Below the pieces are notes generated by a model, which made no database searches, was not told where the DNA came from, and was given only the letters and a program-made list of their open reading frames with translations. DNA of 59,316 nucleotides. It comes from Octopus bimaculoides (Eukaryota). Positions 1-59,316 of this stretch are shown piece by piece. Made by a program: the position numbers and the translations under genes. Position 1 is the first letter of the stretch, and every line of letters starts with the position of its first letter. The stretch spans positions 47,526,567 through 47,585,882 of the forward strand of contig NC_069000.1 in the NCBI RefSeq assembly GCF_001194135.2. Reading direction: 5' to 3'.

Positions 1-373
1 GTCCATAAACAAATCTCAGGGTCAAACACTGTCTATAGCTGGTCTTCTCTTGGAACAGCCCTGCTTCTCACATGGACAACTGTATGTTGGCTGCTCAAGA
101 GTGGGCAGCAAAAAAAAACCTATTTGTATATGCTCCACAAGGGAAAACAAGGAACATTGTTTACAACGAGGTGTTATAATCACAACAGCAAGAAAGTATG
201 TACATGATCACCTTCTTTTACAAAACTTCATTGACTTTCATATATTTATATTGATATACATATATATACGTGTGTATATACATCTCTATATATAAAGATG
301 ATGCGTAGTCTAGACGGCGTTTTTAGATTTCATTATTCTCTTTAACCCGGGCAACGCCGGGTATTTCTGCTAG
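1..373 (+). mobile_element. 3' end of a Helitron (C-terminus of PIF1-like RepHel helicase + terminal hairpin + CTAG)
   Basis: Frame +2 reads SINKSQGQTLSIAGLLLEQPCFSHGQLYVGCSRVG (helicase motifs T/SxxKSQGQT and FSHGQLYVAxSRV). After a frameshift in a 9-A run it continues NLFVYAPQGKTRNIVYNEVL* (stop 177-179). Hairpin acccgggcaacgccgggt at 345-362, then CTAG at 370-373 followed by T. Confidence 0.9.
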
Positions 374-1039
374 TATATCTATATATATATAGGATTAAAT
401 GTAAGGATAAGCAATTTAGGCAAGTCATATGGCAATAATATGGTTGTTTAAGAATACTAAATATGTTTGTGTATATTTGAATTATTTTGTCTCTCATGAA
501 AGTGTGTGGCACATTTGCTTGTCACTGCCATTTATAGCCAGGCAGTCTCTCTCTCTCTCTCTCTCTCCATTGCCTAACATCCTACCAATGATGGCAACAA
601 AGACATAACAAACCCCATCAGACTTGCCTAGCTTGCTTGTCCTTACATTTATTCCTCTCCGTGCTCAAGTTTAAATCTCTTGAGCACTATGAAGTGTATT
701 CTGTACACAGAATACTTGTCTCTAATCTATCTATATGTATATATATTGTTAATGTTTGTTTTTATGTTCAGTTCTAATAAAAACAAATTTGCTTTAATCT
801 CAATAGTTACTCTATAGTTTTGTAGAGTACAAATTTATTATTCTTAAACAAGAATATCATTGACAGTGTGACGATGGTTTAACTGGTCAAAACTTTGAAG
901 TCACTGCCAATAATATGCTTGTTTAAGAATAATGAATATGAGTGTGCGTATGTACGTGTGTATGTATATGTGAATATTTTGTCTCTCATTAAAGTTTATG
1001 GCATGTTTGCTTGCCACTGCCTAACATCCTGCTAGTCAA

Positions 1040-1965
1040 GAACTTCTACGAGATAACTTGTTTAGGGCTGCAGATCAGACATTTGGCTGGAGTGAAGGCC
1101 CAGCCTAGTCAGTATATTACATGGTGGTGGATTATTATGGGGTATAAGGTAATAAAGGCTAAGAGAAAGGTTTGGAAAACCTGCAAGGATGGTAACGGTA
1201 AGGAGCATTACCAAGTGGTTAAAAGAGCTGCTAAGGGACAGGTATGTTTCACTAGGGATAAGGGAGAAACTTGTTCAAGTTTTGCCATGTGAGGGTCCGA
1301 GTTGTGAAGTGTTCAGGATGGTAAGGCAGTGTGTGAGAGAGAACTGTGATGTCACTGGTGAGAAGTGTATTTGGAAGGAGGAGATGGTATATCTGCCATC
1401 GATGAGGAAGACAAGGCAATGACATGGAATTCTGTTATAAGAGGCTGGGGAACATGGAGAATGCATGAGATAAAAAAAGGACTACGTTCTAGTCACCAGA
1501 CAGAGGGACCGACAATTCAAGTTGACAGGTCCATTAGGGATAATTGGAGGGATGCTTAAAATATCTGGTTAAGGTAGGATAAATGGATAGTTAATGAAGT
1601 CATACGGGAAGGTGTCATACCCAAAGGCCAAAGTAGTAGTGTCATTGGAAAATGCTATAAGGAGGAAGGTGATGCCTTAGAGAGAATTCAAACAACTGGA
1701 TCAAGTTATGAAGATCAGAGAGAGAGAGCTATAGCAGAATAGATTTGTCACTGCTTCAATTTGTGCTGGAAGAGGTACCACAGATGCACTATTCTTAGTG
1801 AGGCAACTACAAGAGAAATACTTGGCTAAGAGTAAAGAATTATTCCTGACATTCATTGTCTTAGAGACAGTGTCTGACAGGGTACTGTATACTACTATAA
1901 TGTGGTAGTCACTAGGGAAACTAAATGTTGACAAATGGCTTGTTAGGGCTGTACAAGTTATGTGC
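1040..1965 (+). mobile_element. Degenerate RTE-clade LINE fragment (linker + N-terminal RT region)
   Basis: Frameshifted translation gives AKRKVWK...KEHYQVVKRAA and GRGTTDALFLVRQLQEKYLAKSKELF...WLVRAVQVM, typical of RTE reverse transcriptases; multiple stops. Confidence 0.8.
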
Positions 1966-2227
1966 AGCTGTCAAATGGTGCCCGGGTGGGGGTGGGGGGT
2001 ACTTTTTCAAGTCGGCGTAAAAGCGAGACAGAGAAAGTGCGATTGGATTGGGGAAGTTCTTTTGAAGTTGGTGTTCCGTGTGTGTGTGAGCGCTACAGTT
2101 TTGTTCCTGCTGCTAACTTTTTCTCTCTCTAGGTTTATTTTTCTGTTTGTTGGCGATTTTATGATCAGATTCATAGATACGTTTTTATTAATATTTTTTC
2201 GTTTATATTATTTGTTTTGAAATGTAT

Positions 2228-2346
2228 TATATAAATACAGACACAAGCATAAATAAATGTCCGCTTTCTACGTCAGTCAGTGAAGGCAGTCACTGGCGTA
2301 AACTTTAAAATACATATCCTAGTAAATTCACTCAGTACAAGTAGGT
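2228..2346 (+). promoter_or_regulatory. Candidate core promoter and non-coding first exon (possibly of the TPR-TIR gene)
   Basis: TATATAAA 2228-2235, CATAAATA 2248-2255, Inr-like TCAGTC 2273-2278, donor-like CAA|GTAGGT at 2341. Motif-only inference. Confidence 0.3.
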
Positions 2347-2798
2347 TGTTTGGCAAGTTCAGGAAATACGATTAGGTTGACAGCAGTTAAAAGTGAAACT
2401 ACATTGAAAATTGCTTTGACAACTTGTGACTTCTTTCGTCCAGCTTTGAAAACACCTCAACACATTCCTGGGATCTTTTTTAAAACGGGGGCCACATTTT
2501 TCATTAATGTTTTACGTAGTGCTTTTGGTACCGAAAGACTTTCAAACTTCGTATACTTATCTATTTTGTGTTATAGAACAGAAAAATATTTTTGTATTCG
2601 AATTTATTTCATGTAAAAAATTGTCTTATTTCTTCGTTTTATTTGCTTTTTTCTTTTTAAATTTGCTGTTTAACCCTAACCCTATCACCGATAGAATTGT
2701 TTCAGAATCGTTTGTTTATGTAGTCGGCACTTAATGTATATCGGCTGAATGGACGTCAGTGATTGGTTGAAATTACAGAAATACGACAATTTTAACAT

Positions 2799-3501
2799 NN
2801 NNNNNNNNNNNNNNNNNNNNNNNNNNNNNNNNNNNNNNNNNNNNNNNNNNNNNNNNNNNNNNNNNNNNNNNNNNNNNNNNNNNNNNNNNNNNNNNNNNNN
2901 NNNNNNNNNNNNNNNNNNNNNNNNNNNNNNNNNNNNNNNNNNNNNNNNNNNNNNNNNNNNNNNNNNNNNNNNNNNNNNNNNNNNNNNNNNNNNNNNNNNN
3001 NNNNNNNNNNNNNNNNNNNNNNNNNNNNNNNNNNNNNNNNNNNNNNNNNNNNNNNNNNNNNNNNNNNNNNNNNNNNNNNNNNNNNNNNNNNNNNNNNNNN
3101 NNNNNNNNNNNNNNNNNNNNNNNNNNNNNNNNNNNNNNNNNNNNNNNNNNNNNNNNNNNNNNNNNNNNNNNNNNNNNNNNNNNNNNNNNNNNNNNNNNNN
3201 NNNNNNNNNNNNNNNNNNNNNNNNNNNNNNNNNNNNNNNNNNNNNNNNNNNNNNNNNNNNNNNNNNNNNNNNNNNNNNNNNNNNNNNNNNNNNNNNNNNN
3301 NNNNNNNNNNNNNNNNNNNNNNNNNNNNNNNNNNNNNNNNNNNNNNNNNNNNNNNNNNNNNNNNNNNNNNNNNNNNNNNNNNNNNNNNNNNNNNNNNNNN
3401 NNNNNNNNNNNNNNNNNNNNNNNNNNNNNNNNNNNNNNNNNNNNNNNNNNNNNNNNNNNNNNNNNNNNNNNNNNNNNNNNNNNNNNNNNNNNNNNNNNNN
3501 N
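2799..3501. other. Assembly gap (N run)
   Basis: Direct observation. Confidence 1.
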
Positions 3502-4296
3502 TATGTGTGTGTATATATATATATACATATACATACAAGAAGAAGAATATTTGTCTCTTATTATAAAAACAAAAGGGTTTATAGGACTGCAAAAGAAGTG
3601 CTCGAATATAAATGTGATGAAGATAAGCCGTTCTATTTGTATTATATTTGGATATATGTATATATATATTTATGTGTTTGTAGACCACGGTGTTTTTTTT
3701 TTATATATGATTAAATGTTTGAGGGGTGGGGTAGTATGTCAAGTCGTTGACCCAAAGTTAATGTTTGTTCTATAACCAATGCTTCTTTATATGTATATGT
3801 ATATTATATATATATATGTATGTATATAATATATTTTTTCTTCAAAATATGCTGAAAAATACGGAGATTATGATTCTGAAAAAAGTTTCCAAAAATTTTA
3901 GTAAAATCTTTTTTTGAGATTTCTTTTATTTTGAAATATGCGGAAAAATACGGAGATTTATGATTCGGATAAATATTGTAAAACATTTCTGTACTTACGG
4001 TTCTGGTTGGGGTGTTAGGGTTAGGGGGAAAAAGTCAAAATTGAAGAAGTTGGTGGGAAAAAAAGGGGGGGGGGTAAAATTTCAGAATGCCGATTTTTGG
4101 CAATTATTCAGAACCTCCGTATCCGAAAACGGGGATTTTTGGCAAAAAATATTTTAAATCAACAAATTTGGGAGAAAATGGGGGTGAGGGTCTTTCCCAA
4201 AATTGAAGCGAAAACATTAAACATTATGGTTAATGTTTACATCGCCCACTATTATTGAAAGTGGGTAGAAATAAACGGTAAATTGAATTTTCATTG

Positions 4297-4709
4297 NNNN
4301 NNNNNNNNNNNNNNNNNNNNNNNNNNNNNNNNNNNNNNNNNNNNNNNNNNNNNNNNNNNNNNNNNNNNNNNNNNNNNNNNNNNNNNNNNNNNNNNNNNNN
4401 NNNNNNNNNNNNNNNNNNNNNNNNNNNNNNNNNNNNNNNNNNNNNNNNNNNNNNNNNNNNNNNNNNNNNNNNNNNNNNNNNNNNNNNNNNNNNNNNNNNN
4501 NNNNNNNNNNNNNNNNNNNNNNNNNNNNNNNNNNNNNNNNNNNNNNNNNNNNNNNNNNNNNNNNNNNNNNNNNNNNNNNNNNNNNNNNNNNNNNNNNNNN
4601 NNNNNNNNNNNNNNNNNNNNNNNNNNNNNNNNNNNNNNNNNNNNNNNNNNNNNNNNNNNNNNNNNNNNNNNNNNNNNNNNNNNNNNNNNNNNNNNNNNNN
4701 NNNNNNNNN
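4297..4709. other. Assembly gap (N run)
   Basis: Direct observation. Confidence 1.
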
Positions 4710-4949
4710 ATCGTAATGTATGCTGCTTGAAAGGCACTTCTATAAAATTTCATTGAAAAAGACCCAAATTCCTAAAACTTACGAGGGGAAAACTCGGATC
4801 TTGTGAATTATTCGAGGTCTTCTCCCCCCACTTTCCCATTCCTTTGCGCGCATTTTTTTTTTTTTTCCTATTCGTTTTCTTCACATTTTTTTACACTCAT
4901 TGCACTATTTTTTTCTGACTTTCGTTTCCGAGTCAAGTTACTCTTTATT

Positions 4950-5110
4950 GTTTTTACTTGTTTCAGTCATTTGACTGTGGCCATGCTGGAGCACCGCCTT
5001 TAGTCGAGCAAATCGACCCCAGGACTTGCCTAGTACTTACTCTATCGGTACCTTTTGCCGAACCGCTAAGTTACGGGGACGTAAACATACCAGCATCGGT
5101 TGTCAACTGA
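4950..5110 (+). mobile_element. SINE copy (family with ttgactgtggccatgctggagcaccgcc...atcgaccccagga core)
   Basis: The same core recurs at about 11915, 13470, 15340 and 32770. Confidence 0.75.
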
Positions 5111-6512
5111 AGAGCTGGCCTTATATTCTTCTAATCCACCACTAACTTCATTACTTGAATCGCTGACCAGTCTATAGTTTTCCAGTTTGTAACATGATAT
5201 ACCATCAATAGAAATATTAATCTGGAATCGAACACACTACCCCCCCCCCACACTTGGATGCACAGTGCATGTCAGGTGGCTTCACCCAAATCTCATCCTT
5301 GGTCTCAACTGATGATACTAATCCTTCCTCTCCTCCAGTTTCAGATTTTATTGCGCTTGCGTATTGTTACTCGTATTGGAACACAGCTCTCTGACGTACT
5401 GACTCCATCTGGCCTGAGGTGACCTACCAGAACATTGCTGCCATCAAGGAGGTATGCCCTCTTTCAGCTATCTCTTTGATTGTTCAATGTTGTCTCTCCA
5501 TGATTCCCTTTCTACTCAACCTATACCTAGTGGTGCCTGACCTCTCATTGATTCTGATCAAACTGTGATCAGTCCCTCATCCACTGGGCTCCCTCTCATA
5601 AAATATCATGCTCAGGACCCTAATAATTTCAAGTTGGGCCACTGCTCTAATCTCCCTTAAAATTTCTATTGGGCCTGCAGTTAGTTACGGTGGGACATGG
5701 CCCTTGCTGATAGCACATCACATGCATTGCCAAATATTTCCAGTTGTTTTTCCTTGGCCAGCCCTCAACTACAAACACTCCCTCCATAAAATCCTTTTTT
5801 CACCTGGCCCCTATTCTTCTTGCATGTGCCAGGGCTTCGGTGCCATTGGCAACATTAGCTTTCAGGAGAAATAAGAGAGGAACCCCTACAAATGACTGAT
5901 GTCACCTTTACCCCTCGTTTCACCCACGATCTCAATTGTTAATGTCTCAAGTACTTTATGAACCTGTGATTACTAACACTAATTAAACCATCTTAACTTT
6001 CATTCTATTGTATAGTTTATAAACAATAAAACACCATACTCTAGAATTTCTGTGGCCATCTAGGATGTGCGGCATGTCATTTCCATGTGGTTCATTTTGT
6101 TTTGTACAGTAGGCCATTCAACAATTTTACCCACAACCCAAATCTCAACCACAGCCATCAAATCATAGTGTCTCTGTTTTCAAAAAACGTTCCAACCACG
6201 ACAATCCAGCCATATAAAAGTATTTTGATCCACATTCCAAATATAACCATCTTGTCTATAACAGCAAATATCTGTGTATCTTAGTTCTTGGTTCCAGAAT
6301 CACACACTTTACCAGAATGTGAATATCTTTTCTTTCAATTGCTTTTACTTGTTTTCTCTCTTTCACTCTGTACCCTCTCCCCCACTTTTCCTCCTCTCTC
6401 CTTCCCTCTCTTTTACTCCCTCTCTAGCAGTTAATGTCACTTGTATAATGGCAATATTAATACAATGGGATGTAATGCAGGTTTAACTTCTTTTTTTCTT
6501 TTCTTTACCCAG

Positions 6513-8690
6513 GACTCTGATGAAAAAATAAAATTTTACAGGATAAAAGTTGAAGAATTTCCAAACATGCTGGAAGAATCATTTAGCCTTAAAGTGAATC
6601 TACTTAGTGCCAAGTTGCAAAAAGTTGAAAATGCCTTAAGAAATGAAATTTTGCTTGATTTACAAGAAGAAATTTGCAACCAACATGCTAAAGTCTTTCT
6701 CCTTTGGACTTTACATGAGCAAATATTGGCCAAAGAAATCACCATTGAAATACTGGAAAAAGATCCTAATAACTTGTTGGCGTTAACAAACCAAGCGTTA
6801 ATGTTCCTGCATTATGAAAATTTCCCTGAAGTCGATAGAGTGCTAGAGAAACTGAACACTTTAAAAAACAGCACCAATTTCCCTTCATTAGAAGCAAGAG
6901 GTAAAGCTGAAATTGCCTTTTGCATTTCTAGAATATCTTTTCCCCATTATCAACGTGCTATTGAACTTTTCAAAGAAGCTCTTCAGGTTTGCCCAAACAA
7001 TTATTTTTGGCTTTTTCGCTTGGCTCTGCTAATTTATCGTGGGATAAGGATATTACATGATAAAGAAAAGATGGAAAAATTTTCAAAGGAAGCTACTGAA
7101 ATTCTTCAAAGAATTACTTCAAATTATCCTCATCATGTTAATGATCAGCTAATGGCTAAAACTTTGGTTTTGTTAGGATCTCTTCAAAATATTGCTTTTG
7201 TTCATTCTCGTACTAGGACAACGATTAAATATTTCCAGAGAGCTTGTAGTTTGTTTCCTCAAGACCGATTTGTAATGGAAAAAAGTGCTTCTTTCTATTT
7301 AACAATCGCTAAGTATGAAGATGCACAGAAATTGCTGGAAGAAGCCATTAAAAGGAATGAAACCTCACTTTCACATCATCATCTTGGTATTATTTATAGG
7401 AATCAAATTCCTGGATACAAAGATTTGTGCGTTAAAAAATTACCCTTCTCTAATTGTAAAACACAAGAACTAAAAGAATTAAAAGTCGAAAAACGAATAT
7501 TAAAATGTCCTGAGATAATACCTGATATTGAAAGAAATGAAAGTGTTGATAAGGCTGAATACCATTTTAAAAGGGCTTATGGTCTGGATCCTAGTAATTT
7601 GCATGTTTTGTATGATCTGGCTTTGTTATACAGAAGTGTGCGTGAATACGAAAATGCGATGAAATGTTTTGAAGATATAAACTTTTCAGTTTTGGACATT
7701 TGGGAAAAGATCAAATACTTCATTCAATATGGAAAATTTTGTTTTTTTCTGGCTGATAAAAAAGAAAGTGAAGAAGAGAAACAAGATTTAATAGATGCTG
7801 GTACAGATATGTTTGTCTGTGCCATCAATCATTTATCTGAGATTCTGGTGCTCAATAAAAGACAGAAACAAATTTGGGATATCAAAAAGATAATGAAAGG
7901 AATTTATAACTTTGCTGACACAGAATACAAAAGTAATCTAATGAAATTAATTCAGTCTATAAAAGAATTGCCTGATGAGGGAGGAATTTTCCCCAAACTT
8001 CTCAAAGAATGTGGTGGAAATGAACTTTCACAAAAACTACGATTGTTATGCCGGCAGGAGAAATTTCAACAAGCTTTTTTCCATTTAGAGTTTTCTGGTT
8101 GTCAACAAAGTGAAATTGATGTAGACCTTAGGAAAACAATTTATCTTCAATATGCTAAAGAGTTCTATGGAAAGAGACAGAAGGTAGCTACAATAATTTT
8201 CAAAAAATATTATGAACTTTGCTTTGGGTATTCCCAAGAATCTGGACACAAAGTATGTACACTTAGCTCATCAAAGATTCCTTTTTTTCAATATGATGTC
8301 TACATTTTAACATCAAAAAGTGATAATGGTGATGCTAAACATCTAGCAGAGAGTTTGGTGACATATTTTGGATTGCAAACTAGCTACGGAGACTCTGATT
8401 TCACTCTAGGAATAGGAAAAATGGTAAATGTTCATAAAGTAATGGAAGACAGCTGCCATATTGGAATTTTTTATTCCCCGGATATTTTATCTGAAACGGA
8501 ATATGCCATGGAAATTATGAAAAACCGAAAATTGAAAACTGGGAAGATTTTTCTGATAAATAGTTCTGAGATACCCAAACATTTACAAAGTTTTCCTAAT
8601 GTCGACTACAAGAACAAGAATCACACAGAACTGTTAAGACTCTTTGAATTGCTTTGTTCGTCAGAGATAGATAGAGAGATGGATGGATAA
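6513..8690 (+). CDS. TTC22/IFIT-like tetratricopeptide-repeat protein with C-terminal TIR-like domain; single large coding exon
   Basis: Uninterrupted 2.2-kb frame. A pyrimidine tract plus AG at 6511-6512 (ttctttacccag|GAC) marks the exon start in phase 0, so the TTG at 6441 in the ORF track is probably intronic. First in-frame ATG is 6567 (707 aa). TPR-like helices: DPNNLLALTNQA, AIELFKEALQVCPNNYFWLFRLA, AQKLLEEAIKRNETSLSHHHLGIIYRNQ, AEYHFKRAYGLDPSNLHVLYDLALLY. From 8292 a TIR pattern: YDVYIL...GDSDFTLG...MEDSCHIGIFYSPDIL. AATAAA at 8977. Confidence 0.88.
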   Translation, partial: DSDEKIKFYRIKVEEFPNMLEESFSLKVNLLSAKLQKVENALRNEILLDLQEEICNQHAKVFLLWTLHEQILAKEITIEILEKDPNNLLALTNQALMFLHYENFPEVDRVLEKLNTLKNSTNFPSLEARGKAEIAFCISRISFPHYQRAIELFKEALQVCPNNYFWLFRLALLIYRGIRILHDKEKMEKFSKEATEILQRITSNYPHHVNDQLMAKTLVLLGSLQNIAFVHSRTRTTIKYFQRACSLFPQDRFVMEKSASFYLTIAKYEDAQKLLEEAIKRNETSLSHHHLGIIYRNQIPGYKDLCVKKLPFSNCKTQELKELKVEKRILKCPEIIPDIERNESVDKAEYHFKRAYGLDPSNLHVLYDLALLYRSVREYENAMKCFEDINFSVLDIWEKIKYFIQYGKFCFFLADKKESEEEKQDLIDAGTDMFVCAINHLSEILVLNKRQKQIWDIKKIMKGIYNFADTEYKSNLMKLIQSIKELPDEGGIFPKLLKECGGNELSQKLRLLCRQEKFQQAFFHLEFSGCQQSEIDVDLRKTIYLQYAKEFYGKRQKVATIIFKKYYELCFGYSQESGHKVCTLSSSKIPFFQYDVYILTSKSDNGDAKHLAESLVTYFGLQTSYGDSDFTLGIGKMVNVHKVMEDSCHIGIFYSPDILSETEYAMEIMKNRKLKTGKIFLINSSEIPKHLQSFPNVDYKNKNHTELLRLFELLCSSEIDREMDG

Positions 8691-9030
8691 TTGGAATGAT
8701 GGACGGACGAATGGAGTGATGAACAGATGAATGGATAGGTGGATGCATGCATACATATATACGTATGTATTATTCTTTTCCCTTGAATTTTCTCTGGTAC
8801 TCCATCACTACCAACTTTGCATTATATCATTAATTTTCTATATAATTTTTTTTTATATGTGACTGTGGATTTTCATCGATTAGTTCATGAACTTTGGTTC
8901 TTTTCTCTAAAAGAGACTTTGGTTCTTTTCTCTATTGATATTTTATACTGTGAAACTTAATTTAATTTTAATTCTTAATAAATTGAATTTAATTGAGTTT
9001 TTACCTGTAAATTTGGATTTTTATCCCTAA

Positions 9031-9060
<30 letters not shown>

Positions 9061-9061
<1 letters not shown>

Positions 9062-9299
9062 CTATATATATATACATACACACACATACTATAGCCTCAG
9101 GCCCACCAAAGCTTTGTGAGTGGATTTCGTTCACAGAAACTGAAAGCAGACTGTTGTATATATATGTGTGTGTTTGTACCCCTACCATCGCTTGACAACC
9201 GATGTTCTAGCATGGCCGCAATCACATGACCAAAACAAATAAAACAATAAAAAAAACTATAGCATTTTAATCCCGAGCAACGCCGGGCATCTCTGCTAG
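9061..9299 (+). mobile_element. Short non-autonomous Helitron
   Basis: A|TC start at 9061. Terminal hairpin cccgagcaacgccggg (9272-9287) nearly identical to the one at 346-361, then CTAG|T at 9296-9300. Contains an internal SINE fragment. Confidence 0.75.
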
Positions 9300-9742
9300 T
9301 ATATGTATTCCTGTATAGGATTCACACTTGGTTGGTTGGCAATTATAAATATATACTATTTAGTAGGTGAGGGGTGTTTTAATCAGTTAAATCGACCCTT
9401 GTATATGACTGGTACTTAATGGTATCGACCCCAGAAGCATGAAAGGGAAACGTGACACTAGGAGGCCGTGAAATCACAACCAAGGCGGCCGTAACTAAAT
9501 ACTATAAGGTATTTCGTCTGACGTACCAAGCAATTCTATTTCTTTGTTGAAATATTTCGTTTCCTACTTCCAGTCACTTTCAGTTTAAGCGGAAATTTTG
9601 TTCTGCTAAATATAGAAGTTTTCCATTTTTCCCTCTTTTTTTTTATTGTATATAATTATACAATAGGCCACGTCCTTCGTAAACAATAAAAGGGCGAGAC
9701 AAGGACGGAGCCTTCGATCTGATTAAAAATAGAAGCTAAATT

Positions 9743-9801
9743 GGCATAACTACAGGGTTTTACCCCCCAGACTTTGGGGGGTAAAACCCTGTAGTTATGC
9801 C
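9743..9801. mobile_element. 59-bp perfect hairpin MITE, Merlin/IS1016-like (GG termini, 8-bp TSD)
   Basis: 27-bp arm ggcataactacagggttttacccccca (9743-9769), 5-nt loop gactt, exact reverse complement 9775-9801. gctaaatt is duplicated at 9735-9742 and 9802-9809. Confidence 0.85.
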
Positions 9802-9999
9802 GCTAAATTTCCTTTAGATCTTACCTTACCTTCTAAAAACAAAATAAAAAAAAATACTTAGGTATTGTTGTTGTAGGTTCTTTGCACTGACGAGATGGTC
9901 ACGGCTGGAAAAACTTTGACTTTAATCAAACATCTCCTCTGTCAGGAATAATCTGGAGTTAAACAACAATAGCAATAACAGGAACAATAATATATCGTC

Positions 10000-10019
10000 G
10001 GCATCTCTGTAGTTATGCC
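10000..10019. mobile_element. 20-bp internally deleted copy or footprint of the same element
   Basis: ggcatctctgtagttatgcc, flanked by atatcgtc at 9992-9999 and 10020-10027. Confidence 0.8.
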
Positions 10020-55039: not shown

Positions 55040-55905
55040 TTCTTTCACAGCAATGCAAATTACAAAAAGGATGTGCGAAGCAACCAGTATTCAGGCGACA
55101 AGAAAGCCCATGGAGGCCTGTAGTTGAGGAGCCTGCCACAACGACAGATCAAATCCGTGCATACGCCAGTTCCCACTCTGAGGGCAATGGAGACATGAAG
55201 TTCGTCCAAGCTGAGTAGGCCACCAACATTAGCCACAAGGATGGCATCAATCCAGTCACCTGAGTATTTGGCGCTAGCAGACAGTAAGCAGTACCTTAAA
55301 AACTGGTCCAACTGGACGAAGAGGGAGTCGAAGGTAGCCTTCGAAATTATGTTGTCCCAAGCTCTCTGACTCCAGCAGTCCACCTTCTCAGGAGCAGACA
55401 AGCCCAATTCCCACCAGTGTTGGAGAGCTTCATCCAACTCCCAGTTGGAACTGGTCCATGTTGGAGAAGAGAGGATGTTTCTCACCAGGGTGGAGGAAAG
55501 AAAGCAGGGGAGAGAGAGGGACGAGCACTTACGAAGACCAAGACCTCCAAATCGCTTGGCCAATGCAGCCTGGTTGCAGGATGTTGGAGAGATTCTGACA
55601 TTGACTGACCATTCAAGTCTTTCAAAGATTAGGTTGCTGATGCATTGGAGGCACAATGGGAATCGGTAAGATGAGCTGACTCTGAGTAAATATAGAAGTT
55701 TAGGGATCGAGAGGTAATTCCTAAGTATGAAAAAACCTTGATGGGGTTTGATAACTTTAATATTTTTCAGCAATTTCTCAAGGGCAGCCACCTTCAACTG
55801 GAAGATGGACTCAAAGGCAAGGTCAGTGATTGGAGCCCCTAGGGAGTACCAAGCTGATGGGGGAGGGGCTGCAATGGAAGGGAAGGACTCTGCAAAAAGG
55901 TCAAT
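55040..55905 (-). mobile_element. CRE-like (restriction-like-endonuclease) non-LTR retrotransposon fragment
   Basis: SLGAPI...QAALAKRFGGLGLR...SGDWIDAI...IALRVG...CRCG resembles the post-RT thumb and zinc-knuckle region of CRE/RLE-type LINEs; truncated at both ends. Confidence 0.7.
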
Positions 55906-57419: not shown

Positions 57420-57645
57420 TCTAATGTTGCCAGTACCACCTGACTGGCCTTCGTGCCGGTGGCATGCAAAAGCACCCACTACACTCTCGGAGTGGTTGGC
57501 GTTAGGAAGGGCATCCAGCTGTAGAAACTCTGCCAAATCAGATTGGAGCCTGGTGCAGCCGTCTGGTTTGCTAGTCCTCAGTCAAATCGTCCAACCCATG
57601 CTAGCATGGAAGGCGGACATTAAACGATGATGATGATGATGATGT
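57420..57645 (+). mobile_element. SINE with (ATG)n tail
   Basis: Near-identical to 16300-16500. Confidence 0.8.
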
Positions 57646-58914: not shown

Positions 58915-59316
58915 GGAAGAGGTAGTCATCATCATCATCGTCGTCATTTAACATCCACTCTCCATGCTGGTATGGGTTAGGTAGTTTGACTGGAATGGAT
59001 GAGCAGGAGAGCTGCCCCCAGGTTCCCGTCTGATTTGGTATGGTTTCTACAGCTGGATGCCCTTCCAAATGTCAACCACTCCAGGAGTGTAATGGGTGCT
59101 TTTATGTGCCACCAGTACAGCTGCCATTTCCATGACACTGGCAACAACTAAGATTCATAGGTGCCACTTACATGGCACCAGCAACAACCACAATTACAAT
59201 GCATGGCTGCCATTTACATGACACTGGCAACAACTAAGATTCATAGGTGCCACTTACATGGCACCAGCAACAACCACAATTACAATGCATGGCTGCCATT
59301 TACATGACACTGGCAT
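58915..59316 (-). mobile_element. SINE with internal 86-bp tandem repeat
   Basis: (CAT)n tail at about 58925; ctgccattt recurs at 59121, 59207 and 59293 (period 86). Confidence 0.8.

What the first reader, a model, noticed from the sequence alone, without database searches (positions are those of the whole stretch)
6513..8690. IFIT/TTC22-like TPR array fused to a C-terminal TIR domain
The N-terminus (SFSLKVNL...KLQKVENALRNEI...DPNNLLALTNQA) resembles recalled TTC22. The middle (FVMEKSASFY...KLLEEAIKRNETSLSHHHLGIIYRNQ...AEYHFKRA...DLALLY...YENA) parallels recalled IFIT5 (VLRYAAKFY...LLKKALEVTPTSSFLHHQMGLCYRAQ...AIFHFKAA...DLANMY...YSNA). Vertebrate IFITs have no TIR domain. The single large coding exon behind a splice acceptor echoes vertebrate IFIT gene structure. 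Inference: a cytosolic RNA sensor wired directly to a TIR output, with no transmembrane or leucine-rich-repeat part.
Basis: partly seen in the sequence, partly recalled or inferred. Interest (0 to 1): 0.8.

Follow-up and report, generated by a model that had tools for sequence, protein, structure and literature searches.

The report
Octopus IFIT-like protein with TIR domain
This octopus gene encodes a protein whose front four-fifths closely resemble vertebrate IFIT antiviral RNA-binding proteins and whose tail is a TIR signalling domain; it belongs to a large, uncharacterised invertebrate family, although IFITs were thought to be confined to jawed vertebrates.

Summary
Window 6513-8690 (+) is the large last exon of an Octopus bimaculoides gene. 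It starts behind a real splice acceptor and encodes 725 aa.

Residues 1-556 (numbered from the ATG at 6567) are a full-length, collinear IFIT homologue:
- IFIT1 and IFIT5 are the best natural matches among solved structures by sequence profile (1e-34).
- They are the only fold matches with a high TM-score (0.60-0.68).
- The family's best-conserved polar residues align with IFIT1's RNA 5'-end pocket.

Residues 573-700 are a divergent TIR domain. Pfam misses it, but family profiles find only TIR domains in the PDB (3.5e-10; 4e-5 with a strict 6-sequence profile). The AlphaFold model shows the TIR strand/helix order.

At least 85 representative proteins share this architecture. The named ones are molluscs, one hemichordate and one sea urchin, and all are uncharacterised. 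A "TIR-TPR" class is listed in oyster and Aplysia immune-gene surveys. I found no paper linking it to IFIT.

Most likely function, inferred: an RNA-end sensor driving TIR-TIR signalling. Rivals are a TRIF-like adaptor or an NADase effector.

Verdict: a new variant of known kinds, of moderate to high interest.

The parts
6490..6512 (+). Splice acceptor: pyrimidine tract plus AG (AG at 6511-6512)
   Evidence: Sequence read. The boundary matches the exon 2 start of paralogue P0003 and of O. vulgaris P0002.
6513..8690 (+). Large last coding exon: 725 codons plus stop at 8688-8690. Protein numbering here follows gene call P0001, whose residue 1 is the ATG at 6567.
   Evidence: The 14-codon first exon was not found in the window. 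It is expected near or inside assembly gap 2799-3501.
6513..8234 (+). IFIT-like TPR superhelix: P0001 residues 1-556 plus the 18 residues before the ATG
   Evidence: - Query against the PDB: IFIT1 is the best natural hit at 7e-4.
- Family profile: IFIT1 1.2e-34 and IFIT5 1.9e-33, collinear over IFIT1 residues 2-192 and 232-468.
- N-terminal subdomain profile alone: IFIT1 2.2e-12.
- AlphaFold model pLDDT 85.4.
- Foldseek TM-score 0.60-0.68 to IFIT5/IFIT1.
6918..7040 (+). Counterparts of the IFIT1 cap/triphosphate pocket: F118 (6918-6920), R122 (6930-6932), Y128 (6948-6950), R158 (7038-7040). K19 lies further upstream at 6621-6623.
   Evidence: Mapping through the family HMM:
- IFIT1 W147 to F118 (family Y/F)
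- K151 to R122 (family R in 60 of 71)
- Y157 to Y128
- R187 to R158 (family R in 65 of 71)
- R38 to K19
7377..7382 (+). HH motif (H271, H272), the counterpart of IFIT1 H289/Q290
   Evidence: Family H in 63 of 72 at the first column; H in 51 and Q in 8 at the second.
8235..8282 (+). Flexible linker (residues 557-572) between the TPR array and the TIR domain
   Evidence: pLDDT below 50 at residues 557-569.
8283..8666 (+). Divergent TIR domain (residues 573-700). Box 1 YDVYIL is at 8292-8309. BB loop GDSDFTLGIG is at 8388-8417. A possible alpha-C Glu, E649, is at 8511-8513.
   Evidence: - No Pfam hit for the window's own sequence.
- 50-sequence family profile against the PDB: TLR15/2 TIR at 3.5e-10, then Hydra TRR-2, oyster TIR-STING, MyD88, TRAM, MAL.
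- 17 of 50 members hit Pfam TIR_2 and 5 hit TIR.
- A strict 6-sequence profile still returns TIR domains as its 21 best hits, 4.3e-5.
- Model: strands and helices in TIR order over residues 576-697, pLDDT about 90.
- Motif mapping.

Best explanation
**What it is.** The locus is an intact Octopus bimaculoides gene for a soluble protein of about 740 aa, with two parts joined by a short flexible linker.
- Part 1 is a complete IFIT-type TPR superhelix. It is homologous end to end with vertebrate IFIT1/IFIT5 and keeps the core of their RNA 5'-end pocket.
- Part 2 is a C-terminal TIR domain of the animal TLR/MyD88 (scaffold) type.

**Proposed mechanism (inferred).**
1. The IFIT-like clamp binds a non-self RNA 5' end, triphosphate or incompletely methylated cap, in the pocket lined by K19, F118, R122, Y128, R158 and H271/H272.
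2. Binding changes the conformation or promotes self-association.
3. This frees or clusters the TIR domain.
4. The TIR domain nucleates TIR-TIR assemblies with other TIR proteins, such as MyD88-type adaptors, to switch on NF-kB/IRF-type antiviral transcription.

**Shown here:** the gene structure, both domain identities, the family and its spread, conservation of the pocket residues, and purifying selection.

**Inferred:** RNA as the ligand, activation by ligand binding, and TIR output through scaffolding.
For: **Source and integrity**
- The window is O. bimaculoides chromosome CM046620.1.
- The ORF is intact.
- dN/dS against O. vulgaris copies is 0.30-0.39 in both the TPR and the TIR parts.

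**IFIT homology**
- IFIT1 is the best natural PDB hit for the single sequence: 7e-4, query 87-305 against IFIT1 95-306.
- For the family profile: IFIT1 1.2e-34 and IFIT5 1.9e-33. The next natural protein, SKI3/TTC37, scores 2.6e-21.
- The match is collinear from IFIT1 residue 2 to 468.
- The N-terminal subdomain alone gives IFIT1 at 2.2e-12.
- The AlphaFold model has pLDDT 85.4 and pTM 0.86.
- In Foldseek, IFIT5 and IFIT1 are the only hits with high TM-scores (0.60-0.68 over about 500 columns). OGT and SPINDLY have similar E-values but TM-scores of about 0.2.
- Several of the family's most conserved polar columns fall on IFIT1 ligand-contact residues R187, H289, K151 and R262.
- The two-exon structure with a 3.7-5.4 kb intron resembles vertebrate IFIT genes (PMC3688568).

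**TIR domain**
- Profile evidence; secondary structure.
- Box 1 Asp, BB-loop Asp and BB-loop Gly are kept.
- The profile matches TLR, MyD88, TRAM and MAL TIR domains at 1e-10 to 1e-5. SARM1/TIR-1 and plant TIR domains score only 0.015-0.7.
- The catalytic-Glu column is not conserved in the family. This favours a scaffolding role.

**Context**
- An intronless SAMHD1-type gene lies 1.6 kb downstream on the same strand. This is consistent with an antiviral neighbourhood.
Against: - No experiment or expression data exist for any member.
- The window protein has lost residues that the family keeps and IFIT1 uses for RNA: IFIT1 Y218 becomes L200, K259 becomes S242, and R262 becomes L245. IFIT1 R255 is Glu across the whole family.
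- The BB-loop proline, important for signalling in many TIR domains, is Leu here.
- The residue mapping rests on an HMM alignment at about 17% identity, and I recalled the list of IFIT1 contact residues from the literature.
- The TIR fold was not confirmed by a structure search of the isolated domain. Long TPR hits filled the 50 rows shown.
- The first exon is missing from the assembly.
- One O. vulgaris copy carries at least 3 frame changes. Copies of this gene can therefore decay, or the assembly is error-prone.
Confidence: 0.5

Rival explanations
1. TRIF-like adaptor. The protein acts downstream of a Toll-like receptor or another TIR receptor rather than sensing RNA itself. The IFIT-like region serves as an autoinhibitory or protein-docking module, as the IFIT-like N-terminal domain of vertebrate TRIF/TICAM1 does.
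For: - TRIF combines an N-terminal helical domain structurally similar to IFIT with a TIR domain, and experiments suggest that this domain binds the TIR to prevent constitutive activation (PMC5397763).
- TRIF/TRAM orthologues are reported absent from molluscs, and other TIR proteins are proposed to fill that role (PMC9334734).
- The family TIR profile matches TRAM at 7.6e-7 and TLR3 at 2.8e-5.
Against: - TRIF keeps only about 150 aa of IFIT-like fold. This protein has the whole IFIT clamp, and the pocket residues are its best-conserved polar positions. That is hard to explain for a pure docking module.
- It has no TRAF6-binding motif, no RHIM, no real pLxIS motif and no long disordered region.
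- The TRIF N-terminal domain is not among the 60 best PDB matches of the N-terminal profile.
- The TRIF TIR domain is not among the 60 matches of the TIR profile that are shown, out of 63.
Confidence: 0.2
2. RNA-triggered NADase effector. Ligand binding to the IFIT-like domain clusters the TIR domain. The TIR domain then cleaves NAD+ or makes a nucleotide signal, as in SARM1 and in bacterial and plant TIR immune proteins. The result is metabolic shutdown or death of the infected cell.
For: - The window protein has glutamates in helix alpha-C (E643, E645, E649). In an ungapped comparison, E649 aligns with the Glu of the TLR 'YEL' motif, the position of the catalytic Glu in NADase TIR domains (plus my reading of the sequence).
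- TIR domains fused or paired with TPR sensors act as NADase defence systems in bacteria (bioRxiv 10.1101/2023.05.26.542521; PMC7075850 group 6).
- One family member hits Pfam ThsB_TIR.
Against: - That column is not conserved in the family: R in 15, Q in 14, E in 12, K in 9. The closest paralogue lacks a Glu there.
- The profile matches scaffold-type animal TIR domains far better than SARM1/TIR-1 (0.015-0.7) or plant TIR domains (0.05-0.25).
- Human TLR TIR domains also carry this Glu without NADase activity (my knowledge).
Confidence: 0.15
3. IFIT-type effector with a vestigial or merely structural TIR domain, or a decaying gene copy. The protein sequesters RNA or binds translation factors as vertebrate IFITs do, and the TIR tail has no signalling role.
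For: - The TIR domain is so divergent that Pfam does not detect it.
- The BB-loop Pro is lost.
- IFIT-like proteins without a TIR domain exist in molluscs, for example P0008 (480 aa), P0036 (499 aa) and P0070 (458 aa).
- One O. vulgaris copy has frame changes, one of them at the TPR/TIR junction.
Against: - dN/dS in the TIR part (0.30) is as low as in the TPR part (0.36-0.39).
- The TIR domain is kept in 85 of 150 representative relatives across three phyla.
- The model is confident in this region, with pLDDT about 90.
Confidence: 0.1
4. Generic TPR scaffold unrelated to IFIT function. On this view the IFIT resemblance only reflects shared TPR repeats.
For: - Consensus-designed TPR proteins score as high as or higher than IFIT in profile searches.
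- Liu et al. 2013 rejected invertebrate BLAST hits as non-IFIT TPR proteins (PMC3688568).
Against: - The designed TPR proteins score through many repeated short matches, whereas IFIT matches once, collinearly, end to end, including the non-repeat N-terminus.
- TM-scores of 0.60-0.68 are seen only for IFITs.
- The pocket residues are conserved.
- The gene structure is shared.
Confidence: 0.05

Closest known systems
Vertebrate IFIT1/IFIT5 (interferon-induced proteins with tetratricopeptide repeats)
   Same: - Full-length collinear sequence-profile match (1e-34) and the same global fold (TM-score 0.60-0.68).
- Conserved counterparts of K151, Y157, R187, H289 and Q290, and an aromatic residue at W147.
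- Two-exon gene with an intron of a few kb.
- Tandem gene copies in O. vulgaris.
- Cytosolic, with no transmembrane segment.
   Different: - It has an added C-terminal TIR domain and extra helices (residues ~470-555).
- Exon 1 encodes 14 codons rather than ATG plus 2 nucleotides.
- IFIT1 R255 is not conserved.
- No interferon system is known in molluscs, and induction is untested.
- IFITs act as effectors by sequestering RNA, whereas a TIR tail implies signalling.
TRIF/TICAM1
   Same: - An IFIT-like helical module lies N-terminal to a TIR domain in one cytosolic protein.
- A TRIF-like regulatory contact between the N-terminal module and the TIR domain is conceivable here too.
   Different: - TRIF has only about 150 aa of IFIT-like fold, a long disordered region with TBK1- and TRAF-binding sites, and a RHIM. 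None of these was found here.
- No sequence-level link to the TRIF N-terminal domain or TIR domain was detected among the matches shown.
Invertebrate 'TIR-TPR' proteins listed in immune-gene surveys (oyster PMC4346834; Aplysia PMC9334734), and probably one of the 'ecTIR-DC' families of Gerdol et al. 2017 (that paper is not held)
   Same: - The same domain combination in molluscs and sea urchin.
- Cytosolic, with function unknown.
- The window protein is very probably a cephalopod member of this class.
   Different: - The surveys only count the class.
- In the papers I could read I found no statement that the TPR part is a full IFIT homologue with a conserved RNA pocket.
Oyster TIR-STING (PDB 6wt6)
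   Same: An invertebrate cytosolic nucleic-acid-pathway sensor fused directly to a TIR domain. Its TIR domain is among the best matches of the family profile (4.3e-9).
   Different: - Its sensor is STING, which binds cyclic dinucleotides, not an IFIT clamp.
- Its TIR domain is N-terminal.
Bacterial TIR plus TPR defence proteins (BcTir/Tpr; actinobacterial group 6 TIR-TPR)
   Same: A TIR domain combined with a TPR sensing or regulatory module in antiviral defence.
   Different: - In the actinobacterial fusions the order is reversed (N-terminal TIR); BcTir/Tpr is a two-gene operon. At least the BcTir system works through NAD+-derived signals.
- Their TPRs are not IFIT-like, and there is no evidence of common descent.

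Membership tests
IFIT family | Significant sequence similarity, collinear over the whole protein, closer to IFIT than to other TPR families | tested here: met
   - Single sequence: IFIT1 at 7e-4 is the best natural PDB hit.
- Family profile: IFIT1 1.2e-34 and IFIT5 1.9e-33, against 2.6e-21 for the next natural protein; IFIT1 residues 2-192 and 232-468 aligned.
- N-terminal subdomain alone: 2.2e-12.
- Only solved structures were compared, so TTC22 and other unsolved TPR families were not.
IFIT family | IFIT global fold: a TPR-like clamp of several subdomains, not a regular superhelix | tested here: met
   Model pLDDT 85.4 and pTM 0.86. Foldseek TM-score (normalised by target length) is 0.60-0.68 to IFIT5 and IFIT1, against about 0.2 for OGT and SPINDLY.
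IFIT family | Basic pocket residues that hold the RNA 5' triphosphate or cap | tested here: inconclusive
   - Kept: K19, F118, R122, Y128, R158, H271, H272.
- Lost in this protein: L200, S242, L245, E238.
- The contact list comes from my memory of the IFIT1/IFIT5 structure papers.
IFIT family | Binds 5'-ppp or cap0 RNA | not testable with these tools
   This needs binding assays.
IFIT family | Induced by infection or interferon through ISRE elements in the promoter | not tested
   The promoter and exon 1 are not in the assembled part of the window. In O. vulgaris a GAAAGAGAAA core lies 134 bp upstream of the ATG in two tandem copies. These are copies of one duplicated promoter, so the evidence is weak.
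IFIT family | Two-exon gene: a tiny first coding exon and one large exon | tested here: met
   Paralogue P0003 has a 14-codon exon, a 3.66 kb intron, then the rest. The O. vulgaris gene call has a 14-codon first exon about 5.4 kb upstream of the large exon. Vertebrate pattern from PMC3688568. Exon 1 size and intron phase differ.
TIR domain superfamily | Sequence match to TIR profiles or TIR structures | tested here: met
   - The window's own tail has no Pfam hit.
- Family profile: TIR domains at 3.5e-10.
- Strict 6-member profile, none of whose full-length members gave a Pfam TIR hit at E<=0.01: 4.3e-5, with TIR domains as the 21 best hits.
- 17 of 50 members hit TIR_2 and 5 hit TIR.
TIR domain superfamily | Flavodoxin-like fold of alternating strands and helices | tested here: inconclusive
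   The model gives bA 576-581, aA 584-601, bB 605-607, aB 618-627, bC 629-634, aC 638-653, bD 661-664 and aE 686-697, at pLDDT about 90. No structure search of the isolated domain was possible, and TIR hits were not among the 50 rows shown.
TIR domain superfamily | Box 1 and box 2 (BB loop) motifs | tested here: inconclusive
   Box 1 YDVYIL with the Asp kept (family 71 of 85). BB-loop Asp and Gly are kept, but the Pro is Leu here (family P in 32 of 85).
TIR NADases (SARM1, plant and bacterial TIR enzymes) | Conserved catalytic glutamate in helix alpha-C | tested here: inconclusive
   The window protein has candidate Glu residues (E643, E645, E649). The column is not conserved in the family and is not Glu in the paralogue. 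The alignment is uncertain in this helix.
TRIF/TICAM1 | Detectable homology of the N-terminal domain and TIR domain to TRIF, plus TRAF6, TBK1 and RHIM motifs | tested here: not met
   - The TRIF N-terminal domain is not among the best 60 PDB matches of the N-terminal profile.
- The TRIF TIR domain is not among the 60 matches of the TIR profile that are shown, out of 63.
- No PxExx[acidic/aromatic] motif, no RHIM and no real pLxIS motif.
- The architectural analogy remains.
TTC22 | Closer similarity to TTC22 than to other TPR proteins | not tested
   There is no TTC22 structure or sequence in the tools' reach. None of the 30 representative relatives looked up carries that name.
Invertebrate TIR-TPR class | Cytosolic protein with TPR repeats and a TIR domain in a non-vertebrate animal | tested here: met
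   for the protein. The class is listed in PMC4346834 and PMC9334734.

The most novel reading that the evidence does not exclude
The invertebrate IFIT-TIR family preserves an ancestral bilaterian antiviral sensor in which an IFIT RNA-end clamp signals directly through a TIR domain. Vertebrate IFITs would descend from it by loss of the TIR domain. TRIF/TICAM1 would descend from it by truncation of the clamp to its N-terminal subdomain. This would explain why TRIF carries an IFIT-like domain, and it would push the origin of IFITs back before interferon.
Probability: 0.15. Interest if true: 0.85.

Novelty: new variant of a known kind. Interest (0 to 1): 0.62.

Why it matters
IFITs are textbook interferon-stimulated effectors. 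A genome survey concluded that they arose in jawed vertebrates together with interferon (PMC3688568).

This locus changes that picture in three ways:
- A full-length IFIT homologue with conserved pocket residues in octopus, other molluscs, a hemichordate and a sea urchin would move the origin of the fold's antiviral use to before the protostome-deuterostome split.
- The fusion to a TIR domain suggests that the clamp originally worked, or also works, as a receptor that signals rather than only as an RNA-sequestering effector.
- It offers a concrete candidate for the missing MyD88-independent or RNA-sensing branch of molluscan immunity, and a possible evolutionary link to TRIF's unexplained IFIT-like domain.

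Each point can be tested with standard binding, NADase and reporter assays.

Tried and rejected
1. AlphaFold on the single sequence gave a useless model (pLDDT 41.5). It was replaced by a run with a 73-sequence alignment.
2. Pfam on the window's own C-terminal 146 aa and on the 189 aa before it gave no hit even at E<=10. The TIR call therefore rests on family profiles.
3. The word-index homologue searches were of little use. The single sequence found only itself and one O. vulgaris protein. The alignment query was swamped by generic bacterial TPR proteins.
4. Foldseek against viral structures returned only generic giant-virus TPR/Sel1 proteins.
5. Foldseek against the PDB could not show TIR matches, because long TPR hits fill the 50 rows shown and sub-ranges cannot be submitted.
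6. The search for exon 1 in the window by tblastn and blastn with O. vulgaris DNA failed. Upstream homology ends at 2468 and an assembly gap starts at 2799.
7. TRIF link: the N-terminal profile does not bring up the TRIF N-terminal domain among the best 60 matches. No TRIF signalling motifs were found.
8. Literature:
   - Gerdol et al. 2017, which defines the ecTIR-DC families, is not held.
   - No paper combines the full IFIT name with OsHV-1.
   - 'IFIT-like' plus 'invertebrate' returned only Liu et al. 2013.
9. I considered and rejected a prokaryotic or contaminant origin. The contig is a 47.9 Mb octopus chromosome with introns and octopus orthologues.
Full report
**1. Source and gene structure**

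The window is part of Octopus bimaculoides chromosome CM046620.1, assembly GCA_001194135.2, near 47.5 Mb. It has about 33-40% GC and three assembly gaps. A 749-codon open frame runs 6441..8690 on the + strand. That is far longer than chance allows in AT-rich DNA.

Two relatives show that this is a true exon boundary:
- The paralogue P0003 (XP_014783632, 42% identical) has a 14-codon first exon, a 3.66 kb intron, and a second exon starting at the homologous residue.
- The O. vulgaris relative P0002 starts METEFLRQMVNLTL|DSDEKIKFY.

The window's own first exon was not found. Homology to the O. vulgaris upstream region ends at 2468 and an N gap begins at 2799, about where the exon is expected.

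A tiny first coding exon, an intron of a few kb and one large exon make up the typical vertebrate IFIT gene layout (PMC3688568). There, however, exon 1 carries only ATG plus two nucleotides.

**2. The N-terminal four-fifths is an IFIT homologue, not just a TPR array**

- Pfam sees only generic TPR families.
- Against all solved structures, the single sequence's best natural hit is IFIT1 (7e-4).
- An exhaustive HMMER search of 1.84 billion representative proteins gave 205 relatives.
- A 73-sequence alignment of these (A2) matches IFIT1 at 1.2e-34 and IFIT5 at 1.9e-33. The next natural protein, SKI3/TTC37, scores 2.6e-21.
- The match is collinear from IFIT1 residue 2 to 468.
- A profile of the first 170 residues alone still puts IFIT1 first among natural proteins (2.2e-12, profile positions 5-179 against IFIT1 7-188).
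- Designed consensus TPR proteins score higher only by adding many short repeat matches.
- AlphaFold with alignment A2 gave a confident model: pLDDT 85.4, pTM 0.86.
- In a Foldseek search of the PDB, IFIT5 and IFIT1 are the only hits with high TM-scores (0.60-0.68, normalised by target length, over about 500 columns). OGT and SPINDLY have similar E-values but TM-scores near 0.2.

**3. The IFIT ligand pocket is the best-conserved feature of the family**

I rebuilt the IFIT1 sequence from the tool's own printed alignments. The numbering agrees with the published contact residues as I recall them. I then aligned it to the family HMM.

| IFIT1 residue | Window residue | Family |
|---|---|---|
| R38 | K19 | K in 32 of 67 |
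| W147 | F118 | Y/F in 59 of 71 |
| K151 | R122 | R in 60 of 71 |
| Y157 | Y128 | Y in 35 of 71 |
| R187 | R158 | R in 65 of 71 |
| H289 | H271 | H in 63 of 72 |
| Q290 | H272 | H in 51, Q in 8 |

R158, H271 and R122 are among the most conserved polar columns of the whole family. A plain scaffold would not be expected to conserve exactly these positions.

The window protein itself deviates at three channel positions that the family keeps: L200, S242 and L245. IFIT1 R255 is Glu throughout the family.

**4. The C-terminal domain is a divergent TIR domain**

- The window's last 146 aa give no Pfam hit.
- Among the 150 listed relatives, 85 share the same C-terminal domain of about 125 aa.
- A 50-sequence alignment (A1) finds TIR domains in the PDB almost exclusively: TLR15/2 at 3.5e-10, Hydra TRR-2, oyster TIR-STING, IL-1RAcP, TLR1/6, TRAM, MyD88, MAL and TLR3.
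- 17 of 50 members individually hit Pfam TIR_2 and 5 hit TIR.
- To exclude carry-over from canonical members, I built a 6-sequence profile from the window protein and its five nearest domain relatives. None of their full-length proteins gave a Pfam TIR hit at E<=0.01. The profile still returns TIR domains as its 21 best hits (4.3e-5, covering positions 4-113 of 120).
- The model shows strand and helix elements in TIR order between residues 576 and 697, at pLDDT about 90.
- Box 1 (YDVYIL) and the BB-loop Asp and Gly are kept. The BB-loop Pro is Leu.
- The column of the NADase catalytic Glu is not conserved in the family.
- SARM1 and plant TIR domains match far worse than TLR and MyD88 TIR domains.

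The domain therefore looks like a scaffold-type animal TIR domain.

**5. Spread and state of the family**

The representatives I looked up are:
- O. bimaculoides and O. vulgaris;
- gastropods (Batillaria, Gigantopelta, Pomacea, Physella, Bradybaena);
- bivalves (Tegillarca, Argopecten, Mercenaria, Pinctada);
- a hemichordate (Glandiceps);
- sea urchins (Lytechinus, which have a canonical TIR domain).

All are 'uncharacterized' or 'hypothetical', or are auto-named IFIT1B-like or IFIT5-like. TIR-less IFIT-like proteins also occur in molluscs.

O. vulgaris carries a tandem array with a period of about 13 kb. One copy has at least three frame changes. The adjacent copy is intact across the TPR/TIR junction.

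dN/dS between the two octopus species is 0.30-0.39 in the TPR and TIR parts alike, from small counts. Both parts are therefore under similar, moderate constraint.

**6. What is already known**

- Oyster and Aplysia immune-gene surveys list a 'TIR-TPR' class without further analysis.
- The placozoan paper cites conserved invertebrate 'ecTIR-DC' families proposed to be adaptors. The defining paper is not held.
- Liu et al. 2013 searched sea urchin, acorn worm and lancelet. They concluded that IFITs arose in jawed vertebrates and that the invertebrate hits are not IFITs.
- TRIF's N-terminal domain is structurally IFIT-like and is thought to fold back on its TIR domain.
- TRIF and TRAM are reported absent from molluscs.

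I found no paper stating that the invertebrate TIR-TPR proteins are full IFIT homologues.

**7. Interpretation**

Shown here:
- an intact, selected gene;
- a cytosolic protein with an IFIT clamp, a linker and a TIR domain;
- a large family across three phyla;
- a conserved pocket core.

Inferred: the clamp binds RNA 5' ends, and this controls TIR-TIR assembly and downstream transcription.

The rival explanations, with my confidence in each, are:

| Rival | Confidence |
|---|---|
| TRIF-like adaptor role for the whole protein | 0.20 |
| RNA-triggered NADase effector | 0.15 |
| IFIT-type effector with a vestigial TIR domain | 0.10 |
| Generic TPR scaffold | 0.05 |

The protein lacks TRIF's TRAF6, RHIM and pLxIS motifs and has no transmembrane segment. 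No sequence link to TRIF's domains was found. It is therefore analogous to TRIF, not a demonstrated member of that family.

The adjacent intronless SAMHD1-type gene fits an antiviral neighbourhood but proves nothing.

**8. Verdict**

The thing is best described as a new variant of known kinds: an IFIT-type sensor fused to a TIR output. Its family is visible in databases and counted in surveys, but it has not been characterised.

The interest is moderate to high. It contradicts the published vertebrate-only origin of IFITs. It also yields directly testable hypotheses about invertebrate RNA sensing and about the origin of TRIF's IFIT-like domain.

Noticed in passing
window 10284-11642 (+): An intronless 452-aa ORF encodes a SAMHD1-type dNTP triphosphohydrolase core. 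It matches human SAMHD1 residues 117-572 at 3.6e-123 and has a Pfam HD hit, but no SAM domain lies within the ORF. It sits 1.6 kb downstream of the IFIT-like/TIR gene on the same strand, so two antiviral-type genes lie side by side.
   Followed up: partly
window 33371-33973 (-): An exon encodes a SMAD MH1 domain (Pfam MH1 2.5e-42). It abuts the assembly gap at 32789-33340.
   Followed up: partly
window 2799-3501, 4297-4709, 32789-33340: Runs of N mark assembly gaps. The first lies where the missing 14-codon first exon and promoter of the IFIT-like/TIR gene are expected, because O. vulgaris upstream homology ends at window 2468.
   Followed up: partly
L003 (O. vulgaris OX597833.1) 1-19231: A tandem array of IFIT-like/TIR genes has a period of about 13 kb. 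Copy B (11431-13617) needs at least 3 frame changes to read through, which explains the truncated 521-aa 'IFIT1B-like' model. The upstream copy is intact across the TPR/TIR junction. This could be pseudogenisation or assembly indel errors.
   Followed up: partly
L003 5867-5876 and 18840-18849: An IRF/ISRE-like core, GAAAGAGAAA, lies 134 bp upstream of the ATG of two tandem copies. There are 7 matches in the locus against 1 expected, but they are copies of duplicated segments, not independent sites. The paralogue locus L002 shows no enrichment.
   Followed up: partly
window 16247-16500, 57425-57640, 58931-59119, 31123-31278, 25892-26056: A dispersed repeat of about 250 bp, probably SINE-like, is also present in several copies in the O. 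vulgaris locus at 74-88% identity.
   Followed up: no
window 55060-55797 (-): A 245-aa ORF has no Pfam hit. Its sequence looks like the tail of a retroelement polyprotein.
   Followed up: no
L002 (O. bimaculoides CM046620.1, 57-83 kb): The only close paralogue, P0003 (736 aa, 42% identity), has the same IFIT-like plus TIR architecture. It lies on the same chromosome but about 47 Mb away, not in tandem.
   Followed up: partly
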